Source: Mytilus californianus
Taxonomy: Eukaryota
Reading direction: 5' to 3'
Length of the DNA stretch: 64,000 nucleotides
Assembly: GCF_021869535.1 (NCBI RefSeq)
Contig: NW_026262593.1
Coordinates: 32,054,001-32,118,000 of the forward strand
Made by a program: the position numbers and the translations under genes. The notes under the pieces are model-generated. The model was not told the DNA's origin. It saw only the letters and a list, made by a program, of their open reading frames with translations, and ran no database searches. Below, piece by piece: positions 1,043-48,572 of the stretch; positions within the stretch are counted from its first letter, which is position 1, and every line of letters starts with the position of its first letter.

Positions 1043-2160
1043 ACCACACATGTCGATATGAACTGGGGAAGTAGTATTTATGAAGGTTATTAGTGTGGGT
1101 GGATGGGAAATAGTGTATAAAACTAACTTATATATCGTAACTTTTTTGTAACGAACGTCGCATTGGTCAACCGCGCCTTAAATTTTCCTTATATACTGAC
1201 CCCCGCAATCGTCCGTATAGAAAGGAATTTAAATACGGAAAACAGTTCTTGCAAATCAAGGACCGTAAAGCAAGAAATGTAGTAATAGGTGGAGGTTGTT
1301 CCCTTTAACATTATACAACTCACAATTTACTTTAAATAGATTTATTTTTAATTAACTCAATTATTGGACCCGAATTAGAGAAGAATAATCATTCAAAACT
1401 AGTAAAACACATTGGTTAATAAAGAAAACATTGCACTAGAAAATTAAAGAAACTTAAATGAATCACATAAGTCAAACAATCATGTCGCAAATTGTTTAAA
1501 TAATTATTAATATATTTTAGTATGATGGAACGCCTGTTACATATCGTCCATTTACTTTTACTCCTGGATATGTAAAACGTGCAACGGACATGGTATGTTT
1601 AAAAATGTAGAGGTTACTAATATATATTATACATAATTTCGCATAGAAGATTAATAGTGCTTCAACAAGAGACCCACCCTCTTCAGAATCAATTGAAAAT
1701 TAAAACCACAAGGACGTTTTTGACTTTATCAGTAACTGTTATTAAGTTCGAATAAACTGGAGCGTTTGAAAAACGAATAAAATACACCAACCGAGCGATT
1801 AAATCACCCTATAGAAGGATTCAGCCATGGACATGGGTCAAGTTTGAAATCATACAGTCTTGAAAAGTAACTCAGATTGTTACTGCCATCTTAATCCAAT
1901 TATCTAAAGGACATAACACATCACTTTATAACTAAGAGAAACACAGACAAGGTGCGAGACATGGGAAAGGCATATGAAAATGTGGCTTTATCTAAGTTTA
2001 AAGTTTTTTAGACCCCGATTTAAAAAAACCCGCTCAAAAACAAACATTTGTAAGGTAAGGATGTATTAATACATAGAAACGTTAGGATATATAGAACCAA
2101 AAGTTACCAATCTATAATAGCCAAATTTATATAATTAAAAAAATGAAAACAACACTATAA

Positions 2161-3190: not shown

Positions 3191-6100
3191 CAGTCGATAC
3201 CAGCTACAGACAAACCTGCAGTTCGTTCTAAACCAAAACGAAATCCGTTACCTGATGCTGATGCTCACCCTGGTGCCGTTTCTATACAACCACAGATGAG
3301 TACAGAGGTAAAATAATTAAAACTCTAAAATGTATAGATGATATTTATAAGATTTTTGTACAATAAATTAAGTTGTTGAATCCTAATTTTGTTAAACAAT
3401 AACCTCTATGAGAATATAAGGTGTTTAAAAATGCTCAATTCCGGATGAATGATTATTTCCTACACCCAAATTGATTGTTTTTTGTTTTGTTTTTTTTTTT
3501 TTTGGGGGGGGGGGGGGTTGTTTAACGTCCATTTGGAAATATTTCAAATATATTCAAGACACAATACGAATTGATAATTATTGTTACACTTATACTTTTT
3601 TATTTCACTTTTTCCTCTTAATTTATTTTCACCACATCATATATGTTAATATTCATTAGCCGGCATTTTTGGAGACGGAAAATAATTTTAAATCTCTTTT
3701 ATCTTATTTATTTGTTGAAATTCTTTATTTCTATGTGAATCGACTTCAGAATTTAGATTGTGTTTTTTTCATGCTTGTCTCCATCGTCCAAATAATCGTT
3801 TACCGTATGTGTCTGAAACCTTGCAGTGTGTTTATGTATGTACAAACTCATCATAGAAACCAGGATTAGAATTTTATACGCCTGACGAGCGTTCCGTCAA
3901 CAAATGTCTCATCTAAATCTCAATCATTGAACTAAAGGCTATATGATAACCATGCAATACATAAAAGCACAAGCAAAAAACAAAACAGTGATCAACAATA
4001 AGGTATAAATAGAGGTGAACGAAACCGAAGGGATGATACAAAATCATAAGTCGAAGGACTATACTATGTCAAAAAAAAAAACGGCAACCCGATTAAACGA
4101 TAAAACGGCAAACAAATTTTAACAAAACACTACATAGATATCTAACGAGTCTCATCGTACTGCCAAAAATCGAATGTTGATGTAAACAAGCTTTAGAGTA
4201 CTGGACCAGCCAAATACAAAATCGTGTCGTCCGATACTCTAATAGCAATGCCTGTACTTTACAGAAATCTCATACGGCAACGTCTTAAACATAACAACGC
4301 TTTAAGCTCAGTTGGAAGAGCGGTCACTAACTGTACCCGGGGGCCAGAAATACACGACCTTGTGCAATGCCCAAAACAAACTTGTACATGATTCATTAGA
4401 AAAAGCACTTCAGTCCTGCTGCAAACTTTTAAATTAGCGAACTGATATTTATCAAAAAACAATCAATTACATTACATCAGAGACGTATATTACATAAGGG
4501 TCTTTTGAGAACTAAACTTCAACAAAAGGAGATGATTTCAATGTTCATATTGTGAATTTTCCGTTTCGCTGTAGCAAAGTTCCAACAGCTATGTATCTGA
4601 TTACATGTATGATTCATTAGAAACCTTGATTTCGATTGGCTTCCACGCTTCATACGAAATGTGCTTCGGTCAACGCTTTACAATCAGTAGCAGAGCGGTG
4701 ACTTACTGTACCCGGGGGTCCAGGTTTGATTCCAGGCTGGTATATGGGTAAAGTTTGGAAAGAAAATCACACTCTACTGTGACACATGCAGCACTGCATT
4801 TGCAAATAGTACTCCCAGTATAACGTTTGCAAGTTATTTTCGAAACGAAAAATCGTCGTGATAGAGTCTTGGAAATGATTTGGAAGATTTGCAAATTAGT
4901 ATTAAAACGCTCAGTAATCTATCGCAATCCGCCTGTTGAGATTGCTTGCAACTCAGGTAACAAGTCCGTTTGTGAAGGCGGCTGTTGGTTGATGGATGGA
5001 TAGTGAGTGTTTAATGTGCTATGCAGTTCCCCCTTCACATTTCATTTAAGATGCATTTAAAATTCTGAAACGAATTGTTCAAGTATTTTCACACTACTTT
5101 GATACCCTAAATGTTCCCTTCCAGCTTATAGACATGCTACCTAAAACTTTTAGCACCGTCTTTTTTTCATTAGTTTTAGCAAGTAAGTCTTCTACTTCTG
5201 ACTTGTGTATCTATATAATTTACATTTAGGAAATAATGCGTAAAGCGATAGGTGCAATTAATATGGTGAAACACGGATGTGATTCAGCTATGGTTGTAAA
5301 GGTGATATCAGATCTTCCAATCAATACCGAGGATGCTTTGAGTCGTATTGTGAATTTGGTTGTTGATACGGTAAGTTTTTTTTGTAACTAATGCTTTGAT
5401 AAAACGTAGATAACCTGCCGTTTTTTAACATTTTGATAATAAAATTGCAAACATAAGATTCGTTCTTTTTGTATAGAATAGACTTATTAGAAGTGAATAA
5501 CATATCGTTTGGAATTTGACCTCATAGACTTTATTCCCTTATTGGAAAATCAGTTGGCAATCAGATTATTTTTTATATCGCTACGGAAAAATGGTACAAT
5601 GTGATTGAATTATATTAGAATGTTGTTTTTTAGAAGCAGTAACATTGAGTAATAGTAGAAGTGTAGTTATATGGTTTCTGATATGGTTCCTGATAATACT
5701 CGACACTAATGTCACTTCTTCTCGATTATCAGTTTTTCTGCATAATTAGATTGTAAAAGATTAAGCGAGTCACAATCAAGTAATACAAATTTACATTTGT
5801 ATATAAATGAAAGACAAAATTTTATAGTCAATCAATCAGGTTGAAATTGTATAGATTTATCAATTGATATTTGTTCAGTCTATGTTTTTACTGTTCAGTA
5901 CTTGTTTATTACCCGAACAAAACAACAGCATACTGAACTGACTGAAAAGCGACTGAAAGTACGTGAGAAAGTCCATATCACGGCTTGTCTCATCATATGT
6001 GTTTGAACTGGCTGTGATCATTTTCATTTGAATTTGATTGCAAGCCAAAACTTCTGAACAGTACTGAATTTAGAAGGAGCTTATCGAAAAAATATCTTAA

Positions 6101-9100
6101 ATATAAAACAATACTTAAGATTTTTAGGTTCTGACCTTTAAGAAGATTTTGAGATCAAATTGTCCGTTTAAGATTAAAATTCATTTAATAGTGATATCAC
6201 TGAAAATTTGTACGAAAATGATCACAGCCAGTTCAAACAAATATGATGTGACAAAGCCGTGATATGGATTTTCTCCAGTACTTTCAGACGCTTTTCAGTC
6301 ATTTCAGTATGTGAAACTCTTCCGGAGCACCTGAGTTCAACCACGATTTTCGGTTGGGGTTCCTGTTGTATTATCTTTAGTTTTTTTTTTAAATTTCAGG
6401 CAGTCGATGAACCGAGTTGTTTATCAGTATGTACAAGTCTTTGTCGCACATTATCACGTGTAAGTTGTACAACTTTTCTATATATATAATGTAAAAGTGT
6501 CGTAGATCGTTGTGTACCAAAAGTTTATTGTTTTTAATGTGATAATAATTTTTTGCTGGCTACAAAACGTCATTATCAAATCGTATTGATTGTATATGTA
6601 CATGTATAAAGATTTCCGATAAAGCATTTTAATCGATTAATCCGGCCATTCTAGAAACAAGATTGAATTGAAACTAAGTTGTATTCTTTATTCATGATCA
6701 TCTCCGATATATTTTGTCATTTATGGAATGCATTTATTTTTCCCAAAATAATGGTACTTTCATTGTATCTCTTCTTATACCAAAATAACATCGTATTTAT
6801 AATGTTAATGTAACAGTATAAACTTGGAACTGAGTAGGATCTACAATTCTCTCTGAACAAATTTCAATTCCTTTTTTACTTGGAAATATTGCTATTCTGA
6901 TATAAACTTTTTTTTAAATCCAGTACAAATCAGAATTCAAATATCTTCTAGAAGAAATCAGATTCCCCAGATTTGTACCAGGATAATCCTGGATTGTACT
7001 AAATTTATAGTAGGATCCAAGTAGTTATTAAAATCGTTAAGTTAGTATGAGTACATGTATGGATCGCACTGGGTTTGTTTTGTATTGGTTGTTATCTCTA
7101 ATGGATAAGTCGAAGAACAAAATCAATAAAAATACTTTATCAATACTTTTTTCAAACAAAATTTGGTAAAATACATTTTCATATAAGTCTTAAACTGTCT
7201 TTATTCATATACATATTTCTATGAAATAGGCAAAGGTGCAGTCAAGGAATGATCCTGGTGAAAGTGTTACATTTTCGACTACATATAGACAAAAATGTAC
7301 AAAGGAGATAGAACAGGGAATTCTTAGTAGATCTACAGAGGTAAACTTTATTTTCTTCGCTTATCGTTTGAAGAAGATGGCTTTTTAATTATCAAAATGA
7401 TTATTATTGATAAATTTCTGAGGAATAACAGATTTTTCTAGAAAATTATTACAAAAATGAAATGAATTACTAAACTCGTTTCTAACACAAACTATCTTTT
7501 TTTTTATAACATATTATAGATTAAATTTTGAATTGGTGTTTATGGAATTGTCATTTCTATTTTAGTCTTACAACAGAAGGATAGAAGAAATAGCCAGGTA
7601 AAATGCAACGTTACTTTTTTAATTTTAATCAAGTGCCCCACCCATGCGTTAAGGGCTGATAAGGTCCTGGTCTTATTAGTTAAGGTTTAGATATGGTTTG
7701 CTTACTTCTGACTGTATTACTAGAAATGTTAGTATAGAAATATGTGACGATGCAGAAGCTTTAAATGGAAACTGATTGACACTCTAAGTTTGCAACGACT
7801 TTTGAAAATTAATAGTTCAAACAGCTAACAATGATTTACAAGTTATCCCAACATTGTACCATCGTCTTCAATACTACCAGGTTATCAACAAAAAAAGTTT
7901 TGAAAGAATGAATTAACATTGACTAGTAAATTTTCCATTAAAGAACTTGTTGAAATTAACTTATTTTCTCAAACGAGTTGTCGTGAAAAGTGGTCTGATC
8001 TCATTTTTGATAAGTTCAGCAGAAAATGATTTCAGTCAAAAGGACCGATCTGACTTATATTGAGATCAGTATGTGGTAACAAATAAGCAATGCTGGTAAT
8101 CGCTATGTCAGTGATTAAAACAGATTTACCGAGATCACAAAAAAATTGTTGTTAAACAATGATAACAATATAAAAATAAGTCAATCAAATGCTTATGCTT
8201 AAGTCATCTGTAAACCTTCACATTAAGTTATGAATAACGAGAAAAGTTACCTTTCGAAACACAATCCCCAATATCTTGATAAGTTTAAAGCACAAATTTC
8301 GTCCACGTGAGAGAAAAAAAAAACAAAACACACACACACTAAATGGCAACTAAGAAATATATTTTCAAGACGCAGACATTCCTTTAATAATTTTGTGAAA
8401 ATCAAATGAATTCAAACCGATGAGGACGATATATGAGATTCAGATGAATATTCTATATAAAGGCGATCTTTTATTACCAGATTTACAGGGATCATTGCTC
8501 GTTTAATACTTCTGAAGACATGTGATATCCATTCTATACTAATGAAGTTTGCTCAGACTAAATCAGAACACTGTTTAGAATGTTTTTGCACATTGTTAAC
8601 GGATGTCTGGGAGAGAATGGTGAAGTGTACATCTGCAGTGAGTCATTTAACATTAATTACAGACCTATTATTTTTTTCTATTGTTTCATATGCTAGTTAC
8701 TTGTTCGTCATTGGTTAGATTCACAAGTACAATGGACGGGATTAAACATTCGAATAACGTACAACAAAGTGAAAACTGCTTCGCTTAAACCAGTTGAAAT
8801 TGAAAAAGGCCATATAATGCAAGAAAAACCTTAGAGGAATATAGATGACACTGAAAGTACATAAAATTATAATTGACGAGCCGTAGATGTATGTACTAAT
8901 GAATATAATAGGAATCACACTTCTTATAACACATTCATTGGATTTTGGTTATTTATTGCATATGTGTACCAAGGGTAATGTGATTCGAACATACTTGTTG
9001 AAGTTCTTTGTTAAACCAATATGTGTTCAATTCAAATATAAAAGATTTAAATAGATCTTCGATCAAATTAAAACTTTGAAAGCAATTCCCACATCAAGTA

Positions 9101-9680
9101 AAATATATGAAACCGCCTTTGTTTAAGAAAAATATAGAAAATATACGTTCGAAACAAATCAAATCAAGAACAACTAGACAGATGTGAAGACCAACAGAAG
9201 TTGACGCAAAATTAAATAACATATGTTATATAACTACCAAATATATCTTCGCAATAAAGTGCTTCGGAAAGAAGATATAGTCTTCGCATGCTACATCCAA
9301 GGAACGGCATTAAAGTTGTATAGGTTAATCATTTCTTCATGTGTTATGGAGACAATTACTGCATTTATTTCTAAAATATAATCTGAACAAGGTTAAAATC
9401 ATAATGGACCGTTTTAAAAATGAAAGCGCAAGGGACGATCATTGTTTTTCTCAATAGTCCAGTACAAGATTTGTTTACTTTAGATAAGTCTATATTCATT
9501 TTCTAATTTTAAAGTTTCATTTGTATCTTTTTTGGTTTTTTTTTAAATGTTTGATATATATTTCTTTTGCAGAATTATCTTGACCAATATTATGAAGTGA
9601 TTGATGAAGTGTTATTGTATAGTGAAACACATGCAGCATTGAAATATAAGTTAGGACAACTGAAAAGTAAACAGCGCTAA
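3191..9680 (+). CDS. Divergent eIF4G-like MIF4G (HEAT-1) domain protein; 7 coding exons found, 5' end missing
   Basis: Exons 3191-3307, 5230-5370, 6400-6459, 7230-7340, 7566-7597, 8481-8637 and 9573-9680. All are AG/GT bounded and phase-compatible (0,0,0,0,2,0), and the frame is open to TAA at 9678-9680. The translation ...EIMRKAIGAINMVKH...LPINTEDALSRIVNLVVDT/AVDEPSCLSVCTSLCRTLSR/AKV...TFSTTYRQKCTKEIEQ...SEHCLECFCTLLTDVWERM...NYLDQYYEVIDEVLL...LKYKLGQL parallels the recalled eIF4G MIF4G sequence (ELFRRVRSILNKLT...[35 protein letters not shown]...NFRKLLLNRCQKEFEK...DEESLECLCRLLTTIGK...MDQYFNQME...IRFMLQDV). Confidence 0.8.
5929..6311. mobile_element. MITE / foldback element with ~96-bp imperfect terminal inverted repeats, intronic
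   Basis: 5929-6025 (catactgaactgactgaaaagcg...ctgtgatcattttc) is the near reverse complement of 6214-6311 (gaaaatgatcacag...cgcttttcagtcatttcagtatg). Confidence 0.8.
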
Positions 9681-12076
9681 GTTTGAAAGGTTATAGAGCT
9701 ACATTTTGCTTAGGACTTTCTTTGTTTATTAAATGCTATATTTTCTGTACATTGCAAAACATAATATATTACTTTTATTGTATTATTCGTGAAATAAAAA
9801 TTAAAATATGCAAAATGGTCATGCTTTCATTTCAAAATTTACTTCAGGTCGAAATATCATTACATCGACGGACTGAAAAAATCATCCCCGTTAAAATTCT
9901 TATTTTGATTTACTTTGAAGATAATAGTAAAATACATGTTATATTTCCGTTTAGAATCTTGCTCATCTTGTCCTGATGCTATTAAAGAAACAAAAAAAAA
10001 GTAGTATGCTCTAATGCAAGCAAGTAATGGACCCGTGTCACTAGGAGAACAGGAACTGATAACCTTACCGGAGCATCTGAGTGTATTTAGAAAATGAAAT
10101 ACGTGTATCATCCGAACACCATTTTAAACCGAAATAGACATTTGGTGCTCCGGAAGTGTAAGCATATCATGTCTCACGCATGCCACATCTGTTATGATGC
10201 TTTGATTTAAAAATGGATAAAAAATAATAAAGCACGCATTGAATCAATTGAAACTCTTACCCGATAAAAGTCTGCATTATGGTGACCGTAAAAACGTGTG
10301 TGTTGATAACATTAGCATGGGTTGAATATCACACTAACTAATGCGTTTTGGTGACAGGGATTGTAATATCTCAAAATGGTCCAAGAAGTGTGCGCAATAC
10401 TTGTCATTCGAAAATGAAAACCAAGGTGGCATAGATTTGTTGTCTATTGATAATCATAGATGGTTATTTCACTTTTTGGAGAGATCAGTTGGTACCGTTA
10501 GTTTTAGTGCACATTGGAAGAGACTAAGCTTTTAAATTCCTTGCAGATTTTCGAATTTTTTTATTTATGTTTGTTTCAACATCTTATTCACACTACCGCT
10601 AGGTGAGGTAGTTTCATAGTATCCCTCATCTGATATGGATGCGCCATTTGTACAATGGGGAAATTTCTTGAAACTGAACCTGTATGATAAGCATTGTTCA
10701 GTGTGTAGTATTTACGAAGAACTCATAACAAATACTTACATATTCAAATGATAGTAGCAATTGCACTTATAAAACCAAATGACAAGCCTAGTAAGAAATA
10801 ATGAGTTAAAGAACAGATTAATGGCGGTTGCTATCACATAGTCCGTGTCTATGTATGTTGGCGTTTGTTTTTGTAGCAGTTCAGTGTTTCTGTTGTTCCG
10901 TTTTGTTTCCTCTTATAGTTGATGTGTTTCCCTCAGTTTTGGTTTGTGACCCGGATTTGTTTCAGTTAAATCGATTTATGACTATCTACTATTGCATTTA
11001 TTTATTGGTCGAACAAAAACTAGAAAAAAATACCATACATACTGGTGTAACGTGAGGGTACTCACATTACACCTATTTTGACAATTTTCTGAACAACGTT
11101 TTTTTTTAAGAAGAAGAAAATAGCTTCCAATCTGTGTTTATTTCGTAGATGCATACTTATTTACTATAAATTTTCACAAATGTGTTTTGAATCCATACCG
11201 AATCATAGACAAATAGGTTTAAACCAACGTACACACGACTCAAGATTCTTTAATATGGAATACCTAAATTGCATACACGTTTAACTTTAAAATCGCATAA
11301 CTGATGCTTTGTTTTATTTCTCCGCATTTGTAAAACAATGTGAAAATAGTATATTCTTATTAGTATTTTGTAAGAAATGGATGTCTGTGACAAATTTAAA
11401 TTGCTCATTCTAAAAAAATAAATTTTTTGGATGTTGCAAGTGACGTTTCAGTAGATTTTACCTTTTCACTAAATACTTCATCTGTTGAATTAAAATGTGA
11501 TCGTTTTGTGCATATTTGAATACACTTAGCTATGTTGAAAGACATGTATAATGGAACATTATTAAGGCATATATTGTTTAGTCTCTAAGAAACCTATAAG
11601 ATTTCCGCCGATTAATTTTACAAAATGGGTGCAGAACGGGTACTTTGTGCAATTTGGGTACTGTGACGGTACAAATGTATTATGGTAAAAACTAAAACTA
11701 CTCTGATGTATATATACATTTACAAAGGTACGTACTTTTATATCGAAATCAGAGGAAACTCTAAAGTGAAGATATACTCTGATCATGATCTTTCTTAACT
11801 AACTTGTTTTGAGGTCATCTGGTTTTTATTTGATAGCATATGTAGATTTTACCAGTAGACTCGGCTTTTCTTTTCGTAATTTCAAACACATCGTAAACTA
11901 AATCTTGCAAAATCTTGTTAAAACTTAGTTTATTTTTTAAAAATTTTGAAGGCCGTACGTTGGCATGAGGTTGTTTGTATATATATTCGTTCTTTAGACT
12001 TTAATTTTTTGGAATTTTGGGTCATCAATGCTCTTCAACTTTATACTTGTTTGGCTTTCTAACTATTTTGATCTGA

Positions 12077-14085: not shown

Positions 14086-17000
14086 ATGGATATAACTAAA
14101 ATTTTTCAAGCAATAAACGAGTGTAATGACGACACACCATCAACAACACTAAGAGCAATTAAAAACGGTGAAGACATTAATGTAGTTAGTGAAACAGGCG
14201 AGACTTTTCTCCATGTAATAGCAAATAGATATTCTGGGAAGCAGGAAGCGCCGTTTCTTTTACCGGTTATCTTTCAACTTTCCAATGCAGGAATTAAAAC
14301 AAATGTGAAAAACCAAGATGGCGAAACTGCTCTCCATGTAGCCGTCAAGAAGACTAGAATGCAAAAATTAGTAAGAGCTCTCATAATGATAGGTGTTGAT
14401 CCAAAAATTAACAACACAAACGGTGAGGAAATTAAAGAATTAATAGATGAAGATGAAAGAGACACACAGATCTGTGTTGATTTACTTTATCCAGGCCTAT
14501 GGAATGCTGTCGACAAAGGAGAAGATGAACTGGTACTACGATTGGTCAATTCATGGTGTAATCTTGAGGAAATCAAATATGGGAAACCATTAATGAACTT
14601 AGTACATCTTAATTTAGACGAAAAGACGGCAAATATGATAGAAAAATCGTCTAAAACAATGAAGTTAGTATATGCCTCGCTGGCAAAAGATAAAAAGGCG
14701 ATAAAGAAAGCTTTAAAGGATCCAAATGTGGACGTTAATATAAAAAATGCCACTTATATCGGGGAAGATAATTCCGTTTTCTTTATGCCACTAGCAGGGG
14801 AGATAGCACTGTTACATCTAACGGGGTGTCTCGAAAAGCTTTTAAAATCTGGAGCGGATATAAACGTCATCGTTGATGAAGTTGGTTGTGCTGAACCCTT
14901 ATTCCTTTGTGTAATGAGAACACTGCCAACAACAGAAGACGCGTATGACGTCCTAGAGGTAATGTTGCCATATGCCAATTTTTCCTTGGTTGAAGATAAA
15001 ACATCAACCATATGTAATATCGCTTTTGAAAAGAGACTTCCATTTGCGATAGTGAAGATTATGATTTCAAAGGGTTTGAACCTGTTCGAACGGGACGAAA
15101 ATGGACGTACATTGCGTGACACTATTTACCTTAACAACTATACAGAAGGTAAAGACAATTTAAGATTGAAGCTCGCTTTTGTTGATCAAGTTTTAATCGA
15201 CATAGCATTAGAAGGAGATATGCTTATGTTAGAACGTCTGAGCCTTAATAGTTATGATTACGACCAAGTTGAAAATAGGCGAGGACAATCAATAATAGAG
15301 GTAGTTTCAGAAAAAGGAAAGGAAGATGTCGTGAAGTACTTGGAAAGTTTGCCAGAGCTACAGGTAAAACATATAATTCCGTTAAAATTTGATTATAAAA
15401 ACTGCATATTCACAAAAACCAAATGCCAACAATAAAAAAATGTATTACGAGGCGATGTTTTATCTTTCGAATTAATTAAAAATAATAAATTGCGATCAAT
15501 CAATCAAATCTTAAAATTAGTCTCTCGACATACGATTTCAGGTCCGGTGTATTTGAAATATGTTGTCCTCCATGTTTGCTTTAGGCCTTCAAGCATCATG
15601 TTCTTGTAGAAAAAGTGGAAAAACATTCAACGGATCATTTTGAGATATATAACTTTATAATGAGCAACATGCAATAGGGAGACCGCAATTTAAAATTCTG
15701 AGCATAACGACATACGTTACCATTTTTTTTTTTTATAATAAAAGAATATTTAGAGTATAAATGAATGTCACTGAGACATCAATCGAACGACAAAAATAAT
15801 CTATATGTCATGCAGGCTACAGTAAACAAATGTCTGTAGAATATGTCAGCTTCTAAATCACCCCGAGTGTAAATAATCTTTGAGTAAATTTAAAGAGACT
15901 TACAACGATCTGATGTCAACAGTTAACAAATTCTCCAAAAGAAAAGAACATCACATCTGAGAAAAATCAAAGACAACCACTGCCAATGTTCTTAACTTTG
16001 GTGTAAGCTCATGCCCATAATGGACTAAAGGTTTCAGTACTTTTTTTTTTGTCAATAATATTGACATACATGTATTCATGAAAGGCTTGTATATTTATAA
16101 CTTTAAGGCAATTCCAGGCGAAAATAACGATTCCAAAAGCAATCCAAAATTCCCGCCATACCAAGTTAACTTGAACATGAAAATATATGGCCATATAAGT
16201 GGTAGATGTGACACGTCATCTAAACTGGTTTGAACACCTCCTTTCATGAAAGTAGAGGGCACATAACTAGTGAAGAATATCACATTATATCCCTTAGGTT
16301 GAAATATTAAATGCTACAAGAGATTTTCCAAACTATTAGCCAAATTGTAAAGATATCATAAAAGTTAAGAAATATAGCATTTGTATAATCCTTTTCTTAC
16401 ATGTATGCAGAGAACAATAAGAAGAATTCACGTTGCTATAGAAACTGGAAACCTACACGAAATCAAGCAGCACATGATAAACCGGTTAGCAGATTCTAGG
16501 GACAAAGGTGGTAGAGGACTGTTGCACAAAGCAGTACTTTTTGAAAGGAGATTCATAATCAAATATTTTCTTAAAGAGTACCCTGAGATGGTGCATTTAA
16601 AAGATATTGTGAGTTTAATATTGTTTTTTTTATTTTTTTATAAACAGGCAAATTTTGCTCACGTGAATTTCACATGAAATTCACATAAAACATCTCATGT
16701 GGGATTCACCTCAAACGAGCTTATACATGAAACTCACGTGAAAATTTTCATGTGAATTTCACGTGAAATATTTCGTGCATTTCACATGAACTTTTCCAAA
16801 AAAAAATATTGTATTTTTCATGATTTTAATTAAATTAAAAAAAATCATGTGATTTTCACGTGAAATTCACACGAGTTTCACATGCGATTCACGTGAAACT
16901 CACATAAACTGTTTTCACGTGAGTTTCACGTATAAGCTCGATGGAGGTGAAAATCATGCGATTCAGAATTTCACTTGAGATTCACATGAATTTAAATTCA

Positions 17001-37815: not shown

Positions 37816-40800
37816 TTGGTTAACCTTACAGAAATTCGGACCACATATTCTGAGGTAACTATGATCATACTGTTTTACCTAATCATACTTGCCAAAATAA
37901 CCGAACAGGTACACACCAATAGTATCCTGACCAACAATGATACTTGCATGCCTGTACTCGTCAATGCAAAACAGAACACATCAACTGATATACTTACCTT
38001 TAATACTTACCACCTATTTAGGAAAAGATGTCTTGATAGAGTCGAAAGCACTAAACAGAGATCACTGTTAGCATACCTGGCAGTCATACTCATAAAAACA
38101 TCAAATGACATAAATCTCAACCCAGGACCTGAGTCAACTGTGTATCCATGTGGCACTTGTGACCATCCAGTAACATGGGACGATAGAGGAATAGTTTGTG
38201 ACACATGCAATCAATGGTACCATGTGTCATGCCAGTCGATGAACACTAAATCGTATAATGAATATGCAAATGACAGTGCACTTGCATGGGACTGTATCAC
38301 ATGTGGATGTCCAAACTATTCAACACTATGCTATTCATTAATACTTAGCACATCAAACCATTACAGCGTATTGTCTGACACCTCTCTTACCAGTCCAACG
38401 TCCTCAAAAAATATGAGACCCTTACATGCTTCAACACCGGATAAAAACAAGAACAGAAAACCATCAAAGAAATCTGAAACACCACTTAGATTATTAAATG
38501 TTAACTTCCGATCAATCAAAAGTAAACAAGGACAAGTACTAAATCTCATAGAAAGCACAAACCCAGATATCATCTTTGGACCCGAAACATGGGTAGACAA
38601 TAAGATCACTGACAGTCAAATATTCCCTCCTGGATATAACATCTTCCGGAAAGACAGAAACTGTAGCGGAGGGGGTGTATTAGTAGCTATTACAGATACA
38701 TATATAAACAGCCGTACCTGAACTACAAACTGACTGTGAAATTGTCTGGTGCAAACTTGAACTCATTGGACACAAAGCCATATACTTGAGCTCATACTAC
38801 AACCCTAAAAAACATCCAACGAGAATGGGTACTTAGAACTTGAGAAGAGCCTAACCAGAGCGAACAACATAAAAAATGCTTTAATCATCATAGCTGGTGA
38901 TTTCAACCTACCAGGCTGGGACTGGAAAACCAAATCACTGAAGCCCAATACACAACATACAAACATACACCATAAGTTCACTGACATCCTGGACGATCAT
39001 GGCTTACAACAAATGGTAGAGGAGCCAACAAGAGAATCAAACACACTGGATCTCATAATTACAAACTACCCAAACTGCTTCAACAGAGTCGAAACAATAC
39101 CTGGCATATCAGACCATGACATTGTCTTTGCAGAGTTAAATACCATACCATCTAAACAAACTCAAAAGCCAAGGAAAATATCCTTATATAAAAAAGCAAA
39201 GTGGGAAAACATCAGAGAAGATCTCAAATTGATAAATACTGAAATTACCAAGATGAACCATCATGAATGTAGTACACAAGAAATGTGGGACTATTTTCAA
39301 GGCAAACTTGAAAATACTATAAATGCCAACATACCGCAAAAAACAGCTAGAACAAAAGACGGTAACCCTTGGATTACGGCAGACATCAAACGCCTAATAC
39401 GGAAAAGAGACAAACATTACAAGAAAAAGAAAAAATCAGCTGATGCTAAGCATAACACCAAATATAAAGAACTGAAAAGACTGGTACAGAGAGAAATAAG
39501 ACGAGCATACTGGAAATATATAGAGGACATAATAACACCTGATCCCAAAGTAGACAAGACAAACTGCATGAAACGTTTCTGGACATTCATCAAGCACAAA
39601 AGATCAGACGGAAACCAAATACCACCATTAAGGAACAACGGACTACTCCATCCTGACTCAGTTGAAAAGGCTAACATACTAAATAAGCAGTTCCAATCAG
39701 CTTTTTCTGAAAAAAACCAACTTCACAGAAATAGAATTCAAAAACCGTTGTGACATGACCAACAACAACTACCCTACACTTCAAGACCTGAACATAACAG
39801 AAAACGGAATAGCAAAACTATTATCCAACCTAAACCCATTTAAAGCTGCGGGTCCAGACACCACTACATCAAGGGTGCTGAAGGAATTAGCCATAGACAA
39901 TGCACCAATCCTAACAACCATCTTCAGGCGATCCTATGAAACAGGTGATTTACCGGACATATGGAAAAAGGCTAACGTAAGCCCAATATTCAAGAAGGGA
40001 AACGGTTTGATGCAGTAAATTACCGCCCAGTCTCGCTTACCTGCATTTGCTGCAAAATCATGGAGCACATCGTAACAAGCCACATAATGACCCATGCTGA
40101 CAAACACAACATACTGTATCCACTACAACACGGATTCAGGAGAGGCCTGTCCTGCGAAACACAATTAATTGAGTTTATTAATGACATCACCATAAACATG
40201 GACGCAGGAAAACAAACTGACTGCCTTATAATGGATTTTTCTAAGGCCTTTGATAAAGTAAGTCATAGCCTACTTACCCACAAACTGGATCAATATGGCA
40301 TAAGAGGGAAAACCAATAGGTGGATCAAAAACTTCCTCGCCGACAGGAAACAAGTCGTAGTTGTAGAAGGGGAAAAATCTGATACAATCAACGTCGATTC
40401 GGGCGTCCCACAAGGATCAGTTCTTGGACCCAGTTTGTTCCTTTTCTACATAAATGACATGCCAGAGGGAATCCGATCAAGGGTAAGACTCTTTGCTGAT
40501 GATACAATCATATATCTCACAATATCATCGGACACAGACAGCGACCACCTTCAGGAAGATCTGAATAAATTGGCAATTTGGGAAAACAAATGGAAAATGG
40601 CATTTCATCCAGATAAATGTAATGTTCTTACCATAACAAGAAAACGTAAGCCTATTATAAAAGAATATGTACTGCATGGCCACACCCTCGAATCTCTAAA
40701 TTCTGCAAAGTACCTTGGCTGCACCATCAGCTCCGACTTAAAATGGAATGAACACATTAAAAACATATGTGTTAAAGCAAACAAGACCATAGGCTTCCTC

Positions 40801-41264
40801 AAACGTAACTTGAACATCAATAACAACACAATAAAAGAAACTGCATACAAGTCACTTGTAAGACCGACTCTAGAATATGCATGTACAGTCTGGGATCCTT
40901 ATCAACAAAACGACAAAAACCGACTGGAAATGGTCAGAGGAGAGCAGCCAGATATGTCACAAACAGATATCATTACACATCATCTGTTAGTGACATACTT
41001 AACAAACTAGAATGGAAAACCCTCGAAGACCGTAGGAGAACATCAAGGCTTACAATGATGTATAAACTTGCCAACGGGATGGTGAAAGTTGACACCAGTA
41101 ATACTCTCATTCCACCAGATAGGCTATCCAGAAACATCAACACAAATGGATATCAAGTACCATCTTGTAGGACCGAAGTGCGGAAGGAATCTTTTTACCC
41201 AAGGACGATACGAGACTGGAATGCCCTACCACATACTGCCACCAATACAGGTAGTCTTGAATGA
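37816..41264 (+). pseudogene. LINE ORF2 (PHD finger 38149-38304, AP endonuclease from ~38485, reverse transcriptase ~40000-40600), about five frameshifts
   Basis: C4-H-C3 PHD pattern; [24 protein letters not shown]; NYRPVSL, HGFRRGLSCETQL, DFSKAFDKV, GVPQGSVLGP, FADD. Frameshifts fall near 38710, 38810, 39715, 40000 and 40935. Confidence 0.92.
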
Positions 41265-47858: not shown

Positions 47859-48572
47859 ATGGTATCACAAACTGCGATTTTTATCCTTATGTTTAGTTTG
47901 ATTAGTAAAAGTTTGGAAAACGAGCTGTTTCAGTTTAAATTTGCTCTTCTCAGACCTAATATAAAAACAGCTTCTTTTCTCTCAAGTGAAATTTTAATGA
48001 ACACATTCGTACGCTCCCGACTCGAATGTTACTCGGAATGTGCGTTGTCTGACAATTGTCTCTCTATTACTTACCAAAGCAAGACCTGTATTCAGTATAT
48101 ATCGTACCCACTTACAGTTTTACCAATGAATAACTTGAATTACGTGATATTCAAACCATGGTGTGATGTTTATATTGGATTTATATATATACGGAACCTT
48201 AATCTGTGTTACATGGTAATATCCAACAGTATGCATTGTGTCGACGCGGGTCAAGTATGTTCTCAACATTCAGCATCGATAATTGAGATAGACAGCCAAA
48301 CAAAACAGGACTTCATTGTCAATGTAATAAATAATGACCTTTTTATTTCTGGAATTTTTATTGCTGGACAATTCGCAAGCGGGTCTTGGTTACAAGTGGA
48401 TGGCACACCCCTGTTGTACAATAACTGGGACACCCGTGACACAAACAACATTCAGCCGAACAGTAGAGGTGTAACTGGAGATTGTATTGGAATGGAATCC
48501 ACTTATGAGTTCTATTGGCATGATTTTGAAAGTTCATATAAATATGGTGTTATCTGCGAACAAAGGGATTGA
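47859..48572 (+). CDS. Secreted PAN/apple-domain + C-type lectin domain protein, single coding exon, 237 aa
   Basis: Hydrophobic N-terminus MVSQTAIFILMFSLISKS; PAN-like SRLECYSEC..SDNCLSITY..KTC; CTLD with C..VC...IEIDSQTKQDFI...YNNWD...QPN...GDC...WHD...VICE. Confidence 0.85.
   Translation: MVSQTAIFILMFSLISKSLENELFQFKFALLRPNIKTASFLSSEILMNTFVRSRLECYSECALSDNCLSITYQSKTCIQYISYPLTVLPMNNLNYVIFKPWCDVYIGFIYIRNLNLCYMVISNSMHCVDAGQVCSQHSASIIEIDSQTKQDFIVNVINNDLFISGIFIAGQFASGSWLQVDGTPLLYNNWDTRDTNNIQPNSRGVTGDCIGMESTYEFYWHDFESSYKYGVICEQRD

What the first reader, a model, noticed from the sequence alone, without database searches (positions are those of the whole stretch)
3191..9680. Hidden, highly diverged eIF4G-like gene that stops right after the MIF4G domain
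Seven small exons, almost all missed by the ORF track, splice in phase into a MIF4G fold that follows eIF4G helix by helix. The hallmark residues are replaced (LNKLT becomes INMVK, FEKA becomes VDTA, RRSLGNIKFIG becomes EEIARFTGIIA), and the stop comes immediately after the domain, so there is no MA3 or W2. The splice points fall where I recall eIF4G introns to be, which suggests gene duplication rather than retrocopy. It could be a lineage-specific translation regulator, a dominant-negative or decoy eIF4G (for example against viruses), or a decaying duplicate.
Basis: partly seen in the sequence, partly recalled or inferred. Interest (0 to 1): 0.7.

Follow-up and report, generated by a model that had tools for sequence, protein, structure and literature searches.

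The report
Tail of mussel eIF4G-like gene
The seven exons are real, expressed and spliced as described, but they are the last part of an annotated, unstudied mussel gene (Mytilus californianus LOC127719907) that joins a zinc-finger head and an eIF4E-docking motif to a diverged eIF4G-type MIF4G domain and then stops.

Summary
Observation confirmed. All seven exons (3191-9680, +) have GT-AG borders. RNA-seq reads and transcript contigs join them exactly as proposed, and the transcript ends about 140 nt after the TAA.

The exon translations are exact, contiguous substrings of residues 857-1097 of M. californianus LOC127719907 isoform X2 (P0010). So this is the 3' end of an annotated gene of about 1,000-1,100 aa, not a hidden stand-alone gene. 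An eighth exon lies at 1521-1592, and the rest lies upstream of the window.

The tail is a true MIF4G domain: Pfam 36.1 bits against a cut-off of 30.8. It is closest to eIF4GII/eIF4GI (profile E 1e-21 and 1e-17; VIA Z 15.3). It is not CTIF/SLIP1-like.

Every family member stops at the same place, so MA3, W2 and the eIF3-binding linker are all absent. dN/dS of 0.18-0.27 rules out a decaying duplicate.

Upstream, the same protein carries a conserved YDRKYLL eIF4E-binding motif and a SAP/SWIM-like head. Relatives were found only in Mytilus species and one unidentified transcriptome.

The most likely function, by inference only, is a lineage-specific eIF4E-binding scaffold or regulator.

The scan had already met this gene's first half in the neighbouring window (s1-307176, s1-307193). 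The intron comparison with canonical eIF4G could not be run.

The parts
1521..1592 (+). It encodes the family-invariant T.GYVK linker motif.
   Evidence: Exact match to P0010:833-856, AG/GT flanked. The invariant columns are in alignment A1.
3191..3307 (+). Exon e1 (39 codons), a basic, proline-rich linker before the domain. It starts at a splice acceptor.
   Evidence: Exact match to P0010:857-895. Its last 30 nt appear as the loose end joined to exon 2 in RNA reads and contigs.
5230..5370 (+). Exon e2 (47 codons), the first MIF4G helices (INMVK in place of LNKLT; VVDT).
   Evidence: P0010:896-942 exact. Joint 5370/6400 is present in 4 runs. Aligned to eIF4GII residues 5-55 of chain 1hu3_A.
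6400..6459 (+). Exon e3 (20 codons), AVDEPS block (eIF4G signature AIDEPS).
   Evidence: P0010:943-962 exact. Joints are confirmed on both sides.
7230..7340 (+). Exon e4 (37 codons), KVQS..PGESVTF..CTKEIEQ (eIF4G: KVP..PGNTVNF..CQKEFEK).
   Evidence: P0010:963-999 exact. Joints confirmed.
7566..7597 (+). Micro-exon e5 (32 nt, ends in phase 2), SYNRRIEEIA + AG of the split Arg codon.
   Evidence: P0010:1000-1009 exact plus split codon AGA = R. Joints 7340/7566 and 7597/8481 are in contigs and reads.
8481..8637 (+). Exon e6 (157 nt), FTGIIARL...LECFCTLLT block (eIF4G: FIGELFKL...LECLCRLLT).
   Evidence: P0010:1011-1062 exact. On its own it hits only eIF4G chains in the PDB, E 0.05. Joint 8637/9573 is seen in 11 raw reads.
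9573..9680 (+). Last coding exon e7 (35 codons + TAA), the final MIF4G helices. The stop falls at the end of the last helix.
   Evidence: P0010:1063-1097 exact. The stop position is shared by all 7 aligned family members.
9681..9818 (+). 3' UTR with AATAAA at 9793-9798; transcript contigs end at 9776-9818.
   Evidence: table 8; sequence read.

Best explanation
Shown: region 3191-9680 holds the last seven coding exons of Mytilus californianus LOC127719907. An eighth exon lies at 1521-1592 and the remainder lies upstream of the window. The gene encodes a protein of about 1,000-1,100 aa. Its parts, in order, are an acidic coiled-coil, a SAP-like helix pair and a SWIM-type CxCx5CCxH finger; a long disordered middle; a canonical eIF4E-binding motif (ITYDRKYLL) with a conserved IPEI patch 24 residues further on; and then, encoded here, a diverged eIF4G-type MIF4G/HEAT-1 domain, after which the protein stops. 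The tail descends from the eIF4E-site-plus-HEAT-1 core of eIF4G, is kept under purifying selection, and is transcribed and spliced correctly.

Inferred: the protein docks on eIF4E through the motif and may hold eIF4A through the MIF4G domain. It lacks the linker after MIF4G through which mammalian eIF4G binds eIF3, and it also lacks MA3, W2 and the upstream Trp contact for eIF4A. I therefore think it most likely works as a lineage-specific eIF4E-binding regulator. It would compete with canonical eIF4G or assemble an alternative cap complex on particular mRNAs, perhaps chosen by the SAP/SWIM head. It would not be a general initiation factor.

My odds: identity and architecture about 0.95; regulator or competitor about 0.45; translation-promoting alternative scaffold about 0.3.
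For: All junctions and the 3' end are seen in RNA.

The exon translations are exact, contiguous substrings of P0010:857-1097 and of P0009.

P0010:857-1097 hits Pfam MIF4G at 36.1 bits against a cut-off of 30.8, E 7e-9.

phmmer against the PDB gives eIF4GII 2e-18, eIF4GI 9e-15 and DAP5 5e-4, with nothing from CTIF, SLIP1 or PAIP1. The family profile gives eIF4GII 1e-21, eIF4GI 1e-17 and yeast eIF4G 4e-4, and the motif region hits 4E-BP1 at 0.012.

The AlphaFold model has pLDDT 81-92 over the domain with about 10 helices. Foldseek ranks 1-4 are all eIF4G. VIA gives Z 15.3 to 1hu3 over 193 residues, reaching residue 981 of the eIF4GII HEAT-1 domain.

The stop position, the 4E-binding motif and the MIF4G blocks are conserved in 7 proteins, including one only 56% identical.

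dN/dS over the MIF4G exons is 0.18 against an M. coruscus cDNA (Fisher p 8e-8) and 0.27 against the M. coruscus paralogue locus (p 8e-5). Intron positions are identical in that locus.

From the literature: the eIF3-binding site lies in the roughly 100-aa linker after MIF4G (PMC12709193). A conserved Trp upstream of HEAT-1 contributes to eIF4A binding (PMC9177959). No Trp occurs between the motif and the domain in any family member.
Against: No binding partner has been tested; eIF4E, eIF4A and eIF3 binding are all inferred.

Yeast eIF4G also lacks MA3 and W2 and is a full initiation factor, and Mextli promotes translation, so truncation does not prove a repressive role.

The MIF4G score is only just above Pfam's threshold and several signature residues are replaced, so eIF4A binding may be lost.

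The SAP and SWIM assignments are below Pfam cut-offs, and the model of the head is poor, pLDDT 47.

The upstream 832 residues are not in this window. I know them only from the database protein and from earlier scan notes.

The searches that define the family's taxonomic limits were of low sensitivity: a 52-aa query and word-indexed searches.
Confidence: 0.8

Rival explanations
1. It is a true alternative eIF4G that promotes translation. On this view the eIF4E motif plus MIF4G core is enough to recruit eIF4A and the 43S complex, as in yeast eIF4G (which has no MA3 or W2) or in Drosophila Mextli, and it serves a subset of mRNAs selected by the head.
For: The collinear 4E-binding motif and eIF4G-type MIF4G are conserved under purifying selection. 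Yeast eIF4G aligns to the profile. Mextli, a protein with MIF4G, an RNA-binding domain and a 4E-binding motif, is reported to promote translation through eIF3 (PMC4573856).
Against: The protein ends at the last MIF4G helix, so the post-MIF4G linker that binds eIF3c/b/e in mammals is absent (PMC12709193). There is no Trp in the upstream linker. The loop between the third and fourth repeats is about 28 residues shorter than in eIF4GII. The motif region resembles 4E-BP1 more than the eIF4G peptide (E 0.012 against 0.88).
Confidence: 0.3
2. One reading: a stand-alone MIF4G-only protein of about 240 aa acting as a dominant-negative or decoy eIF4G, for example made from an internal promoter upstream of exon 1.
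For: Transcript contigs of X1 and X2 begin about 1 nt upstream of exon 1, which shows an assembly branch at that junction. Exon 1 contains an in-frame ATG (QPQMSTEE).
Against: Exon 1 starts at an AG acceptor with an open frame continuing from exon e0. Loose ends in X3 reach 185 nt upstream of exon 2, which is into e0. All database isoforms and all orthologues, including two full-length cDNA contigs (L001, L002), join this tail to the long N-terminal part.
Confidence: 0.05
3. It is a decaying duplicate or pseudogene fragment of eIF4G.
For: It is strongly diverged from eIF4G (23-24% identity), hallmark motifs are altered, and it is truncated relative to metazoan eIF4G.
Against: dN/dS is 0.18-0.27 with p below 1e-4. 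The frame is intact and the stop is the same in M. californianus, M. edulis, M. galloprovincialis, M. coruscus (two copies) and a species only 56% identical. It is expressed and correctly spliced.
Confidence: 0.03
4. The domain belongs to another MIF4G family that naturally ends after the domain (CTIF or SLIP1/MIF4GD). This was my own first guess, from memory.
For: Those proteins end right after a MIF4G domain.
Against: Sequence searches hit only eIF4G1/3, DAP5 and yeast eIF4G, with no CTIF or SLIP1 hit. SLIP1 structures rank 12-16 by Foldseek and have Z about 10 against 15.3 for eIF4GII.
Confidence: 0.01

Closest known systems
eIF4G1/eIF4G3 (eIF4GI/II) central core: eIF4E-binding motif + MIF4G/HEAT-1
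   Same: The order is the same: YX4L-Phi motif, then a linker of about 95 aa, then the MIF4G domain. It is the best sequence and fold match (1hu3, 8huj, 6zmw). eIF4G signature blocks are retained (A[IV]DEPS, C.KE.E, F.G, LEC.C.LLT, DQY).
   Different: Only about 23-24% identical. It lacks the eIF3-binding linker, MA3 and W2. The inter-repeat loop is about 28 residues shorter. No Trp lies upstream of the domain. The N-terminal part is a coiled-coil plus SAP/SWIM-like head in place of the eIF4G N-terminus. Relatives were found only in Mytilus species and one unidentified transcriptome.
Yeast eIF4G (Tif4631/4632)
   Same: An eIF4E-binding motif followed by a single HEAT domain, with no MA3 or W2. 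The family profile detects 2vso_E at E 4e-4.
   Different: Yeast eIF4G has RNA-binding regions and sequence after the domain, carries the conserved Trp579 eIF4A contact, and is the general initiation factor.
Mextli (Mxt), the invertebrate 4E-BP with MIF4G-like and KH domains (PMC4573856)
   Same: It combines a MIF4G-type domain, a nucleic-acid-binding module and canonical plus non-canonical eIF4E-binding motifs in one protein that is not eIF4G.
   Different: The order is reversed (MIF4G at the N-terminus, motifs at the C-terminus). Mextli has KH rather than SAP/SWIM. No sequence relationship was detected, and no KH domain was hit in Pfam.
4E-BP1-3
   Same: The motif exon (outside this window) reads ITYDRKYLL...IPEI, with the Ile-Pro 24-25 residues after the Tyr. 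It gives weak hits to 4E-BP1 chains (E 0.012) and to Pfam eIF_4EBP (19.6 bits, below the cut-off of 24).
   Different: 4E-BPs are proteins of about 120 aa with no folded domain. Here the motif is internal to a protein of about 1,100 aa and is followed by MIF4G.
DAP5/eIF4G2/NAT1
   Same: A diverged eIF4G paralogue with its own MIF4G (4iul: E 3e-4, Z 14.4).
   Different: DAP5 lacks the eIF4E-binding motif and keeps MA3 and W2, which is the opposite pattern of losses.

Membership tests
MIF4G domain (Pfam PF02854) | Scores above the curated gathering threshold of the family model | tested here: met
   P0010:857-1097, identical to the seven exon translations, scores 36.1 bits against 30.8, E 7e-9. 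P0011 scores 42.1 bits. Single exons alone give no Pfam hit.
MIF4G domain (Pfam PF02854) | Ten-helix, five-repeat HEAT fold | tested here: met
   The AlphaFold model has about 10 helices with pLDDT 81-92. The top Foldseek and VIA hits are all MIF4G structures; 1hu3 gives Z 15.3 with 193 residues aligned. The rmsd of 7 A shows that the curvature of the model is imprecise.
eIF4G (metazoan eIF4G1/3) | MIF4G closest to eIF4G rather than to other MIF4G families | tested here: met
   PDB hits in order are eIF4GII, eIF4GI, DAP5 and yeast eIF4G. There are no hits to CTIF, SLIP1, PAIP1, CNOT1 or UPF2 by sequence.
eIF4G (metazoan eIF4G1/3) | Canonical eIF4E-binding motif YX4L-Phi N-terminal to MIF4G | tested here: met
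   YDRKYLL lies about 95 residues upstream of the domain in P0010 and is invariant in pattern across 7 proteins. It is encoded upstream of this window. Binding was not tested.
eIF4G (metazoan eIF4G1/3) | eIF3-binding linker after MIF4G | tested here: not met
   The protein ends at the last helix (model residue 308 aligns to eIF4GII residue 981). The stop is conserved and the transcript ends about 140 nt later.
eIF4G (metazoan eIF4G1/3) | MA3 (HEAT-2) and W2 (HEAT-3) domains | tested here: not met
   No Pfam MA3 or W2 hit in P0010, P0002, P0003 or P0011. The stop and polyadenylation signal fall directly after MIF4G.
eIF4G (metazoan eIF4G1/3) | Conserved Trp-containing eIF4A contact upstream of HEAT-1 (yeast W579, site 3) | tested here: not met
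   No Trp occurs between the 4E-binding motif and the domain in any of the 7 sequences. The feature is as described in PMC9177959.
eIF4G (metazoan eIF4G1/3) | Binds eIF4A through HEAT-1 | not testable with these tools
   No complex prediction or contact list was available. Only the Asn of LNKLT and the F.G of FIGELF are retained.
   No canonical eIF4G sequence could be fetched.
Mextli | [quoted passage not shown] | tested here: not met
   The domain order is reversed and there is no KH hit. The Mextli definition is taken from PMC4573856.
4E-BP (Pfam PF05456) | Scores above the gathering threshold; small motif-only protein | tested here: not met
   17.8-22.6 bits against a cut-off of 24. The protein is about 1,000-1,600 aa.
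SWIM zinc finger (Pfam PF04434), for the head of the same protein | CxCxnCxH signature and a score above threshold | tested here: inconclusive
   The signature C242-S-C244-x5-C250-C251-x-H253 is invariant. Pfam scores are 13-17.3 bits against a cut-off of 19.6. The AlphaFold model is poor.

The most novel reading that the evidence does not exclude
Mussels of the family Mytilidae have evolved, by duplicating the eIF4E-site-plus-HEAT-1 core of eIF4G and fusing it to a SAP/SWIM nucleic-acid-binding head, a private cap-complex scaffold. It binds eIF4E, and perhaps eIF4A, without the eIF3 bridge. It would form an alternative eIF4F-like particle that selects or silences particular RNAs, such as germline, stress-response, transposon or viral transcripts.
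Probability: 0.25. Interest if true: 0.65.

Novelty: new variant of a known kind. Interest (0 to 1): 0.45.

Why it matters
eIF4G paralogues with altered partner sets (DAP5, Drosophila eIF4G2, trypanosomatid EIF4Gs, Mextli) have each revealed a distinct mode of mRNA-selective translation. This gene keeps the eIF4E site and HEAT-1, drops everything that links to eIF3 and Mnk, and adds a SAP/SWIM head. No such architecture has been described: two full-text searches found no paper on it. It is conserved and expressed in commercially and ecologically important mussels. It is a natural experiment on what the minimal eIF4G core does without the eIF3 linker. For the scan itself, the result corrects a 'hidden gene' call to 'the tail of an annotated gene'.

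Tried and rejected
(1) Pfam on each exon alone gave no MIF4G hit because the peptides are too short.

(2) PDB phmmer with exon 2 alone found nothing.

(3) My own CTIF/SLIP1 idea was rejected.

(4) Three word-indexed protein searches (P0003 region, P0002 region, P0011 whole) returned family members only. I therefore could not obtain a canonical mussel eIF4G, a head-only relative, or any member outside Mytilus plus one unidentified species.

(5) The look-up of encoding contigs found no record for P0003 or P0010.

(6) The listing of cluster members gave no organism for P0011, P0004, P0005 or P0001.

(7) The AlphaFold model of the head (residues 1-300) was too poor to search, pLDDT 47.

(8) I looked for residue-level eIF4A contacts in the literature. 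The primary papers (PMC2474498, PMC3659266, PMC3829144) are not held. Three yeast contact residues were found second-hand (PMC6262856), but they could not be mapped because the yeast N-terminal half did not align.

(9) tRNA and Rfam scans of the region found nothing.

(10) No second copy of the gene lies in the window.

I used the database protein P0010:857-1097, which the exons match exactly. For dN/dS, codon pairs were counted exon by exon and summed.
Full report
**What is in the sequence.** I re-derived the exon borders by script. They are e1 3191-3307, e2 5230-5370, e3 6400-6459, e4 7230-7340, e5 7566-7597 (32 nt, ending in phase 2), e6 8481-8637 and e7 9573-9680. Every exon is flanked by AG and GT, and together they give 241 codons plus TAA. 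Exon 1 starts at an acceptor with the frame open, so the coding sequence must continue upstream.

**Expression and splicing.** The look-up of sequencing runs offered one stranded raw RNA-seq run of the same organism (X12) and several small runs whose share of words (0.10-0.17) matches exons only. I laid X12 and X1-X3 on 3850-9849, the 6,000-letter limit.
- All five junctions inside that stretch are seen: 5370/6400, 6459/7230, 7340/7566, 7597/8481 and 8637/9573. All are GT..AG, and each appears in raw reads and in one contig per run.
- The loose end in front of exon 2 reads the last 30 nt of exon 1, so the e1-e2 junction is confirmed as well.
- First mates always lie on the minus strand, as expected for a plus-strand mRNA in a dUTP library.
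- Contigs stop at 9776-9818, about 20 nt after AATAAA (9793-9798).

The TAA is therefore in the last exon, and nothing is spliced on downstream.

**Identity.** Single exons were too short for Pfam. Exon 6 alone, however, hit only eIF4G chains in the PDB, at E 0.05-0.7. I spent the one exhaustive HMMER search on exon 6. It returned two long mussel proteins, P0002 (1,577 aa) and P0003 (1,053 aa), with the exon 36 residues from their C-termini.

A word search with P0003 then listed the family:
- M. edulis (P0003);
- M. coruscus, with two genes on one contig (P0006 and P0002);
- M. galloprovincialis (P0008, named 'translation initiation factor 4G, partial');
- M. californianus LOC127719907 isoforms X5 and X2 (P0009, P0010);
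- two transcriptome proteins from Logan (P0007, P0011).

All seven exon translations are exact substrings, in order and without gaps, of P0010:857-1097, and the split codon gives the expected Arg. The window is therefore M. californianus, and the 'hidden gene' is the annotated 3' end of LOC127719907.

The same comparison revealed an eighth exon in the window at 1521-1592 (P0010:833-856, AG/GT flanked). Residues 1-832 are encoded upstream of the window. That agrees with the earlier scan notes s1-307176 and s1-307193 on the neighbouring window.

All searches of the 'spliced product' used the reference P0010:857-1097.

**The domain.** P0010:857-1097 passes Pfam MIF4G at 36.1 bits against a cut-off of 30.8, E 7e-9.
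- phmmer of the M. edulis tail against PDB sequences gives eIF4GII (1hu3) 2e-18, eIF4GI 9e-15, DAP5 5e-4 and nothing else.
- A profile of seven family tails (A1) gives eIF4GII 1e-21, eIF4GI 1e-17, DAP5 3e-4 and yeast eIF4G 4e-4.
- They also show retained eIF4G signatures: A[IV]DEPS, PG..V.F, C.KE.E, LEC.C.LLT and DQY.
- The loop between the two halves of the domain is about 28 residues shorter than in eIF4GII.
- An AlphaFold model built on A1 is confident over the domain (pLDDT 81-92, about ten helices).
- Foldseek ranks 1-4 are all eIF4G, followed by yeast eIF4G, DAP5, Paip1 and SLIP1.
- VIA-align gives Z 15.3 to 1hu3 with 193 residues aligned, and the model's last residue aligns to eIF4GII residue 981. 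The rmsd of about 7 A shows that the superhelical curvature of the model is not reliable, but the fold class is clear.

My own first guess, CTIF or SLIP1, is rejected.

**Is the truncation real and old?** Yes. All seven aligned proteins stop within 0-2 residues of the same position, including P0011, which is only 56% identical over the tail. The M. coruscus paralogue locus L003 has the same intron positions.

Nei-Gojobori counts were made exon by exon and summed.
- Over the MIF4G exons against the M. coruscus cDNA L002, dN/dS is 0.18 (dS 0.23, 201 codons, Fisher p 8e-8).
- Against L003, dN/dS is 0.27 (p 8e-5).
- The linker exons e0 and e1 run at about 0.5.

A decaying duplicate is therefore excluded. 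Six introns inside the domain also argue against a processed retrocopy. Whether these introns coincide with those of canonical eIF4G could not be tested, because none of my three word-indexed searches reached a canonical eIF4G.

**The rest of the protein** (from database proteins, not from this window).
- The N-terminus has an acidic stretch and a predicted long helix.
- Next comes a SAP-like helix pair (Pfam Ish1, 20 bits, below cut-off).
- Then an invariant CxCx5CCxH SWIM signature (Pfam SWIM 13-17 bits, below cut-off). The AlphaFold model of this head was too poor to use.
- After a long, variable, disordered middle (expanded by repeats in P0002) comes ITYDRK[YF]LL, a canonical YX4L-Phi eIF4E-binding motif. 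A conserved IPEI lies 24 residues after the Tyr.
- This stretch gives weak hits to 4E-BP1 chains (E 0.012) and to Pfam eIF_4EBP (below cut-off), and a weaker hit to the eIF4G peptide (E 0.88).
- Exon e0 in this window encodes an invariant T.GYVK motif of unknown role.

**How it probably works (inference).** The order eIF4E motif, linker, HEAT-1 is that of the eIF4G core, so the tail most likely arose by duplication of that core.

In mammals the eIF3 contact lies in the roughly 100-residue linker after MIF4G, at residues 1011-1104 (PMC12709193). Here the protein ends before any such linker, and MA3 and W2 are absent. A conserved Trp upstream of HEAT-1 that strengthens eIF4A binding in yeast (PMC9177959) has no counterpart; no Trp occurs in the linker of any member.

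I therefore favour, at about 0.45, an eIF4E-binding regulator that competes with eIF4G or builds an eIF3-less cap complex on RNAs chosen by the head. Yeast eIF4G also lacks MA3 and W2, and Mextli, a protein with MIF4G, KH and a 4E-binding motif, promotes translation (PMC4573856). A translation-promoting alternative scaffold therefore remains a serious rival at about 0.3. No binding has been tested.

**Distribution and novelty.** Relatives were found only in Mytilus species and in one unidentified transcriptome species: the P0011 cluster, with eight allelic members. These searches were of limited sensitivity, so 'restricted to mytilids' is provisional.

The downstream flank of the window is collinear with the flank of the long M. 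coruscus copy. A tree groups P0010 with P0002 at 81/88 support. M. coruscus therefore carries a second paralogue, P0006, that is closer to the M. edulis-type gene.

Two full-text searches found no paper on such a protein. I rate it a new variant of a known kind, an eIF4G-like paralogue with an unusual build. It has moderate interest, and the scan has already noted the same gene from its other half.

Noticed in passing
window 9673: The genome has A, but all three transcript-contig runs and 8 of 12 raw RNA reads have G. This changes the penultimate codon CAG (Gln) to CGG (Arg); orthologues vary between KQR, KRR and RQR. It is probably a polymorphism. A-to-I editing cannot be excluded without DNA from the same individual.
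   Followed up: no
window 5929-6035 and 6204-6311 (intron 2): A long inverted repeat with arms of about 107 nt, 88-91% complementary, and a spacer of about 170 nt. It looks like a MITE or a hairpin insertion inside the intron.
   Followed up: partly
window 4300-4350 and 4650-4780 (intron 1): tRNA-like, SINE-type fragments (..GAGCGGTSACTWACTGTACCCGGGGG..CAGGTTTGATTCC..). Transcript contigs pile up here at depth 157-219 in X2 and X3, far above the exons, so the repeat family is transcribed elsewhere. ARAGORN calls no tRNA.
   Followed up: partly
window 1521-1592 (exon e0): The short motif T.GYVK is invariant in all seven family members, although the surrounding linker evolves quickly (dN/dS about 0.5). 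It may be an undescribed docking motif between the eIF4E site and the MIF4G domain.
   Followed up: no
window 3190/3191 (e0-e1 junction): Transcript contigs of X1 and X2 both begin about 1 nt upstream of exon 1. This points to a branch in the assembly graph at that junction, from alternative use or skipping of e0 or from retained intron reads.
   Followed up: no
L003 (M. coruscus CACVKT020010439.1) and P0006 on the same contig: M. coruscus has two paralogues of this gene on one 383-kb contig. The long one (P0002) carries a large expansion of Ser/Pro-rich repeats of about 25 aa in the disordered middle, and it is the positional orthologue of the window's gene.
   Followed up: partly
window 14086-15435 (+): An intron-less 449-aa ORF with ankyrin repeats (Pfam Ank_2, 49.7 bits) lies 4.4 kb downstream of the gene. 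It has no tblastn match in the M. coruscus locus L003, although an unrelated ankyrin gene is called downstream there.
   Followed up: partly
window 37816-41010 (+): ORFs with a PHD finger (24.7 bits) and a reverse transcriptase (RVT_1, 102 bits) lie in a region of raised GC and strong negative GC skew.
   Followed up: no
window 47859-48572 (+): A 237-aa ORF with a C-type lectin domain (37 bits).
   Followed up: no
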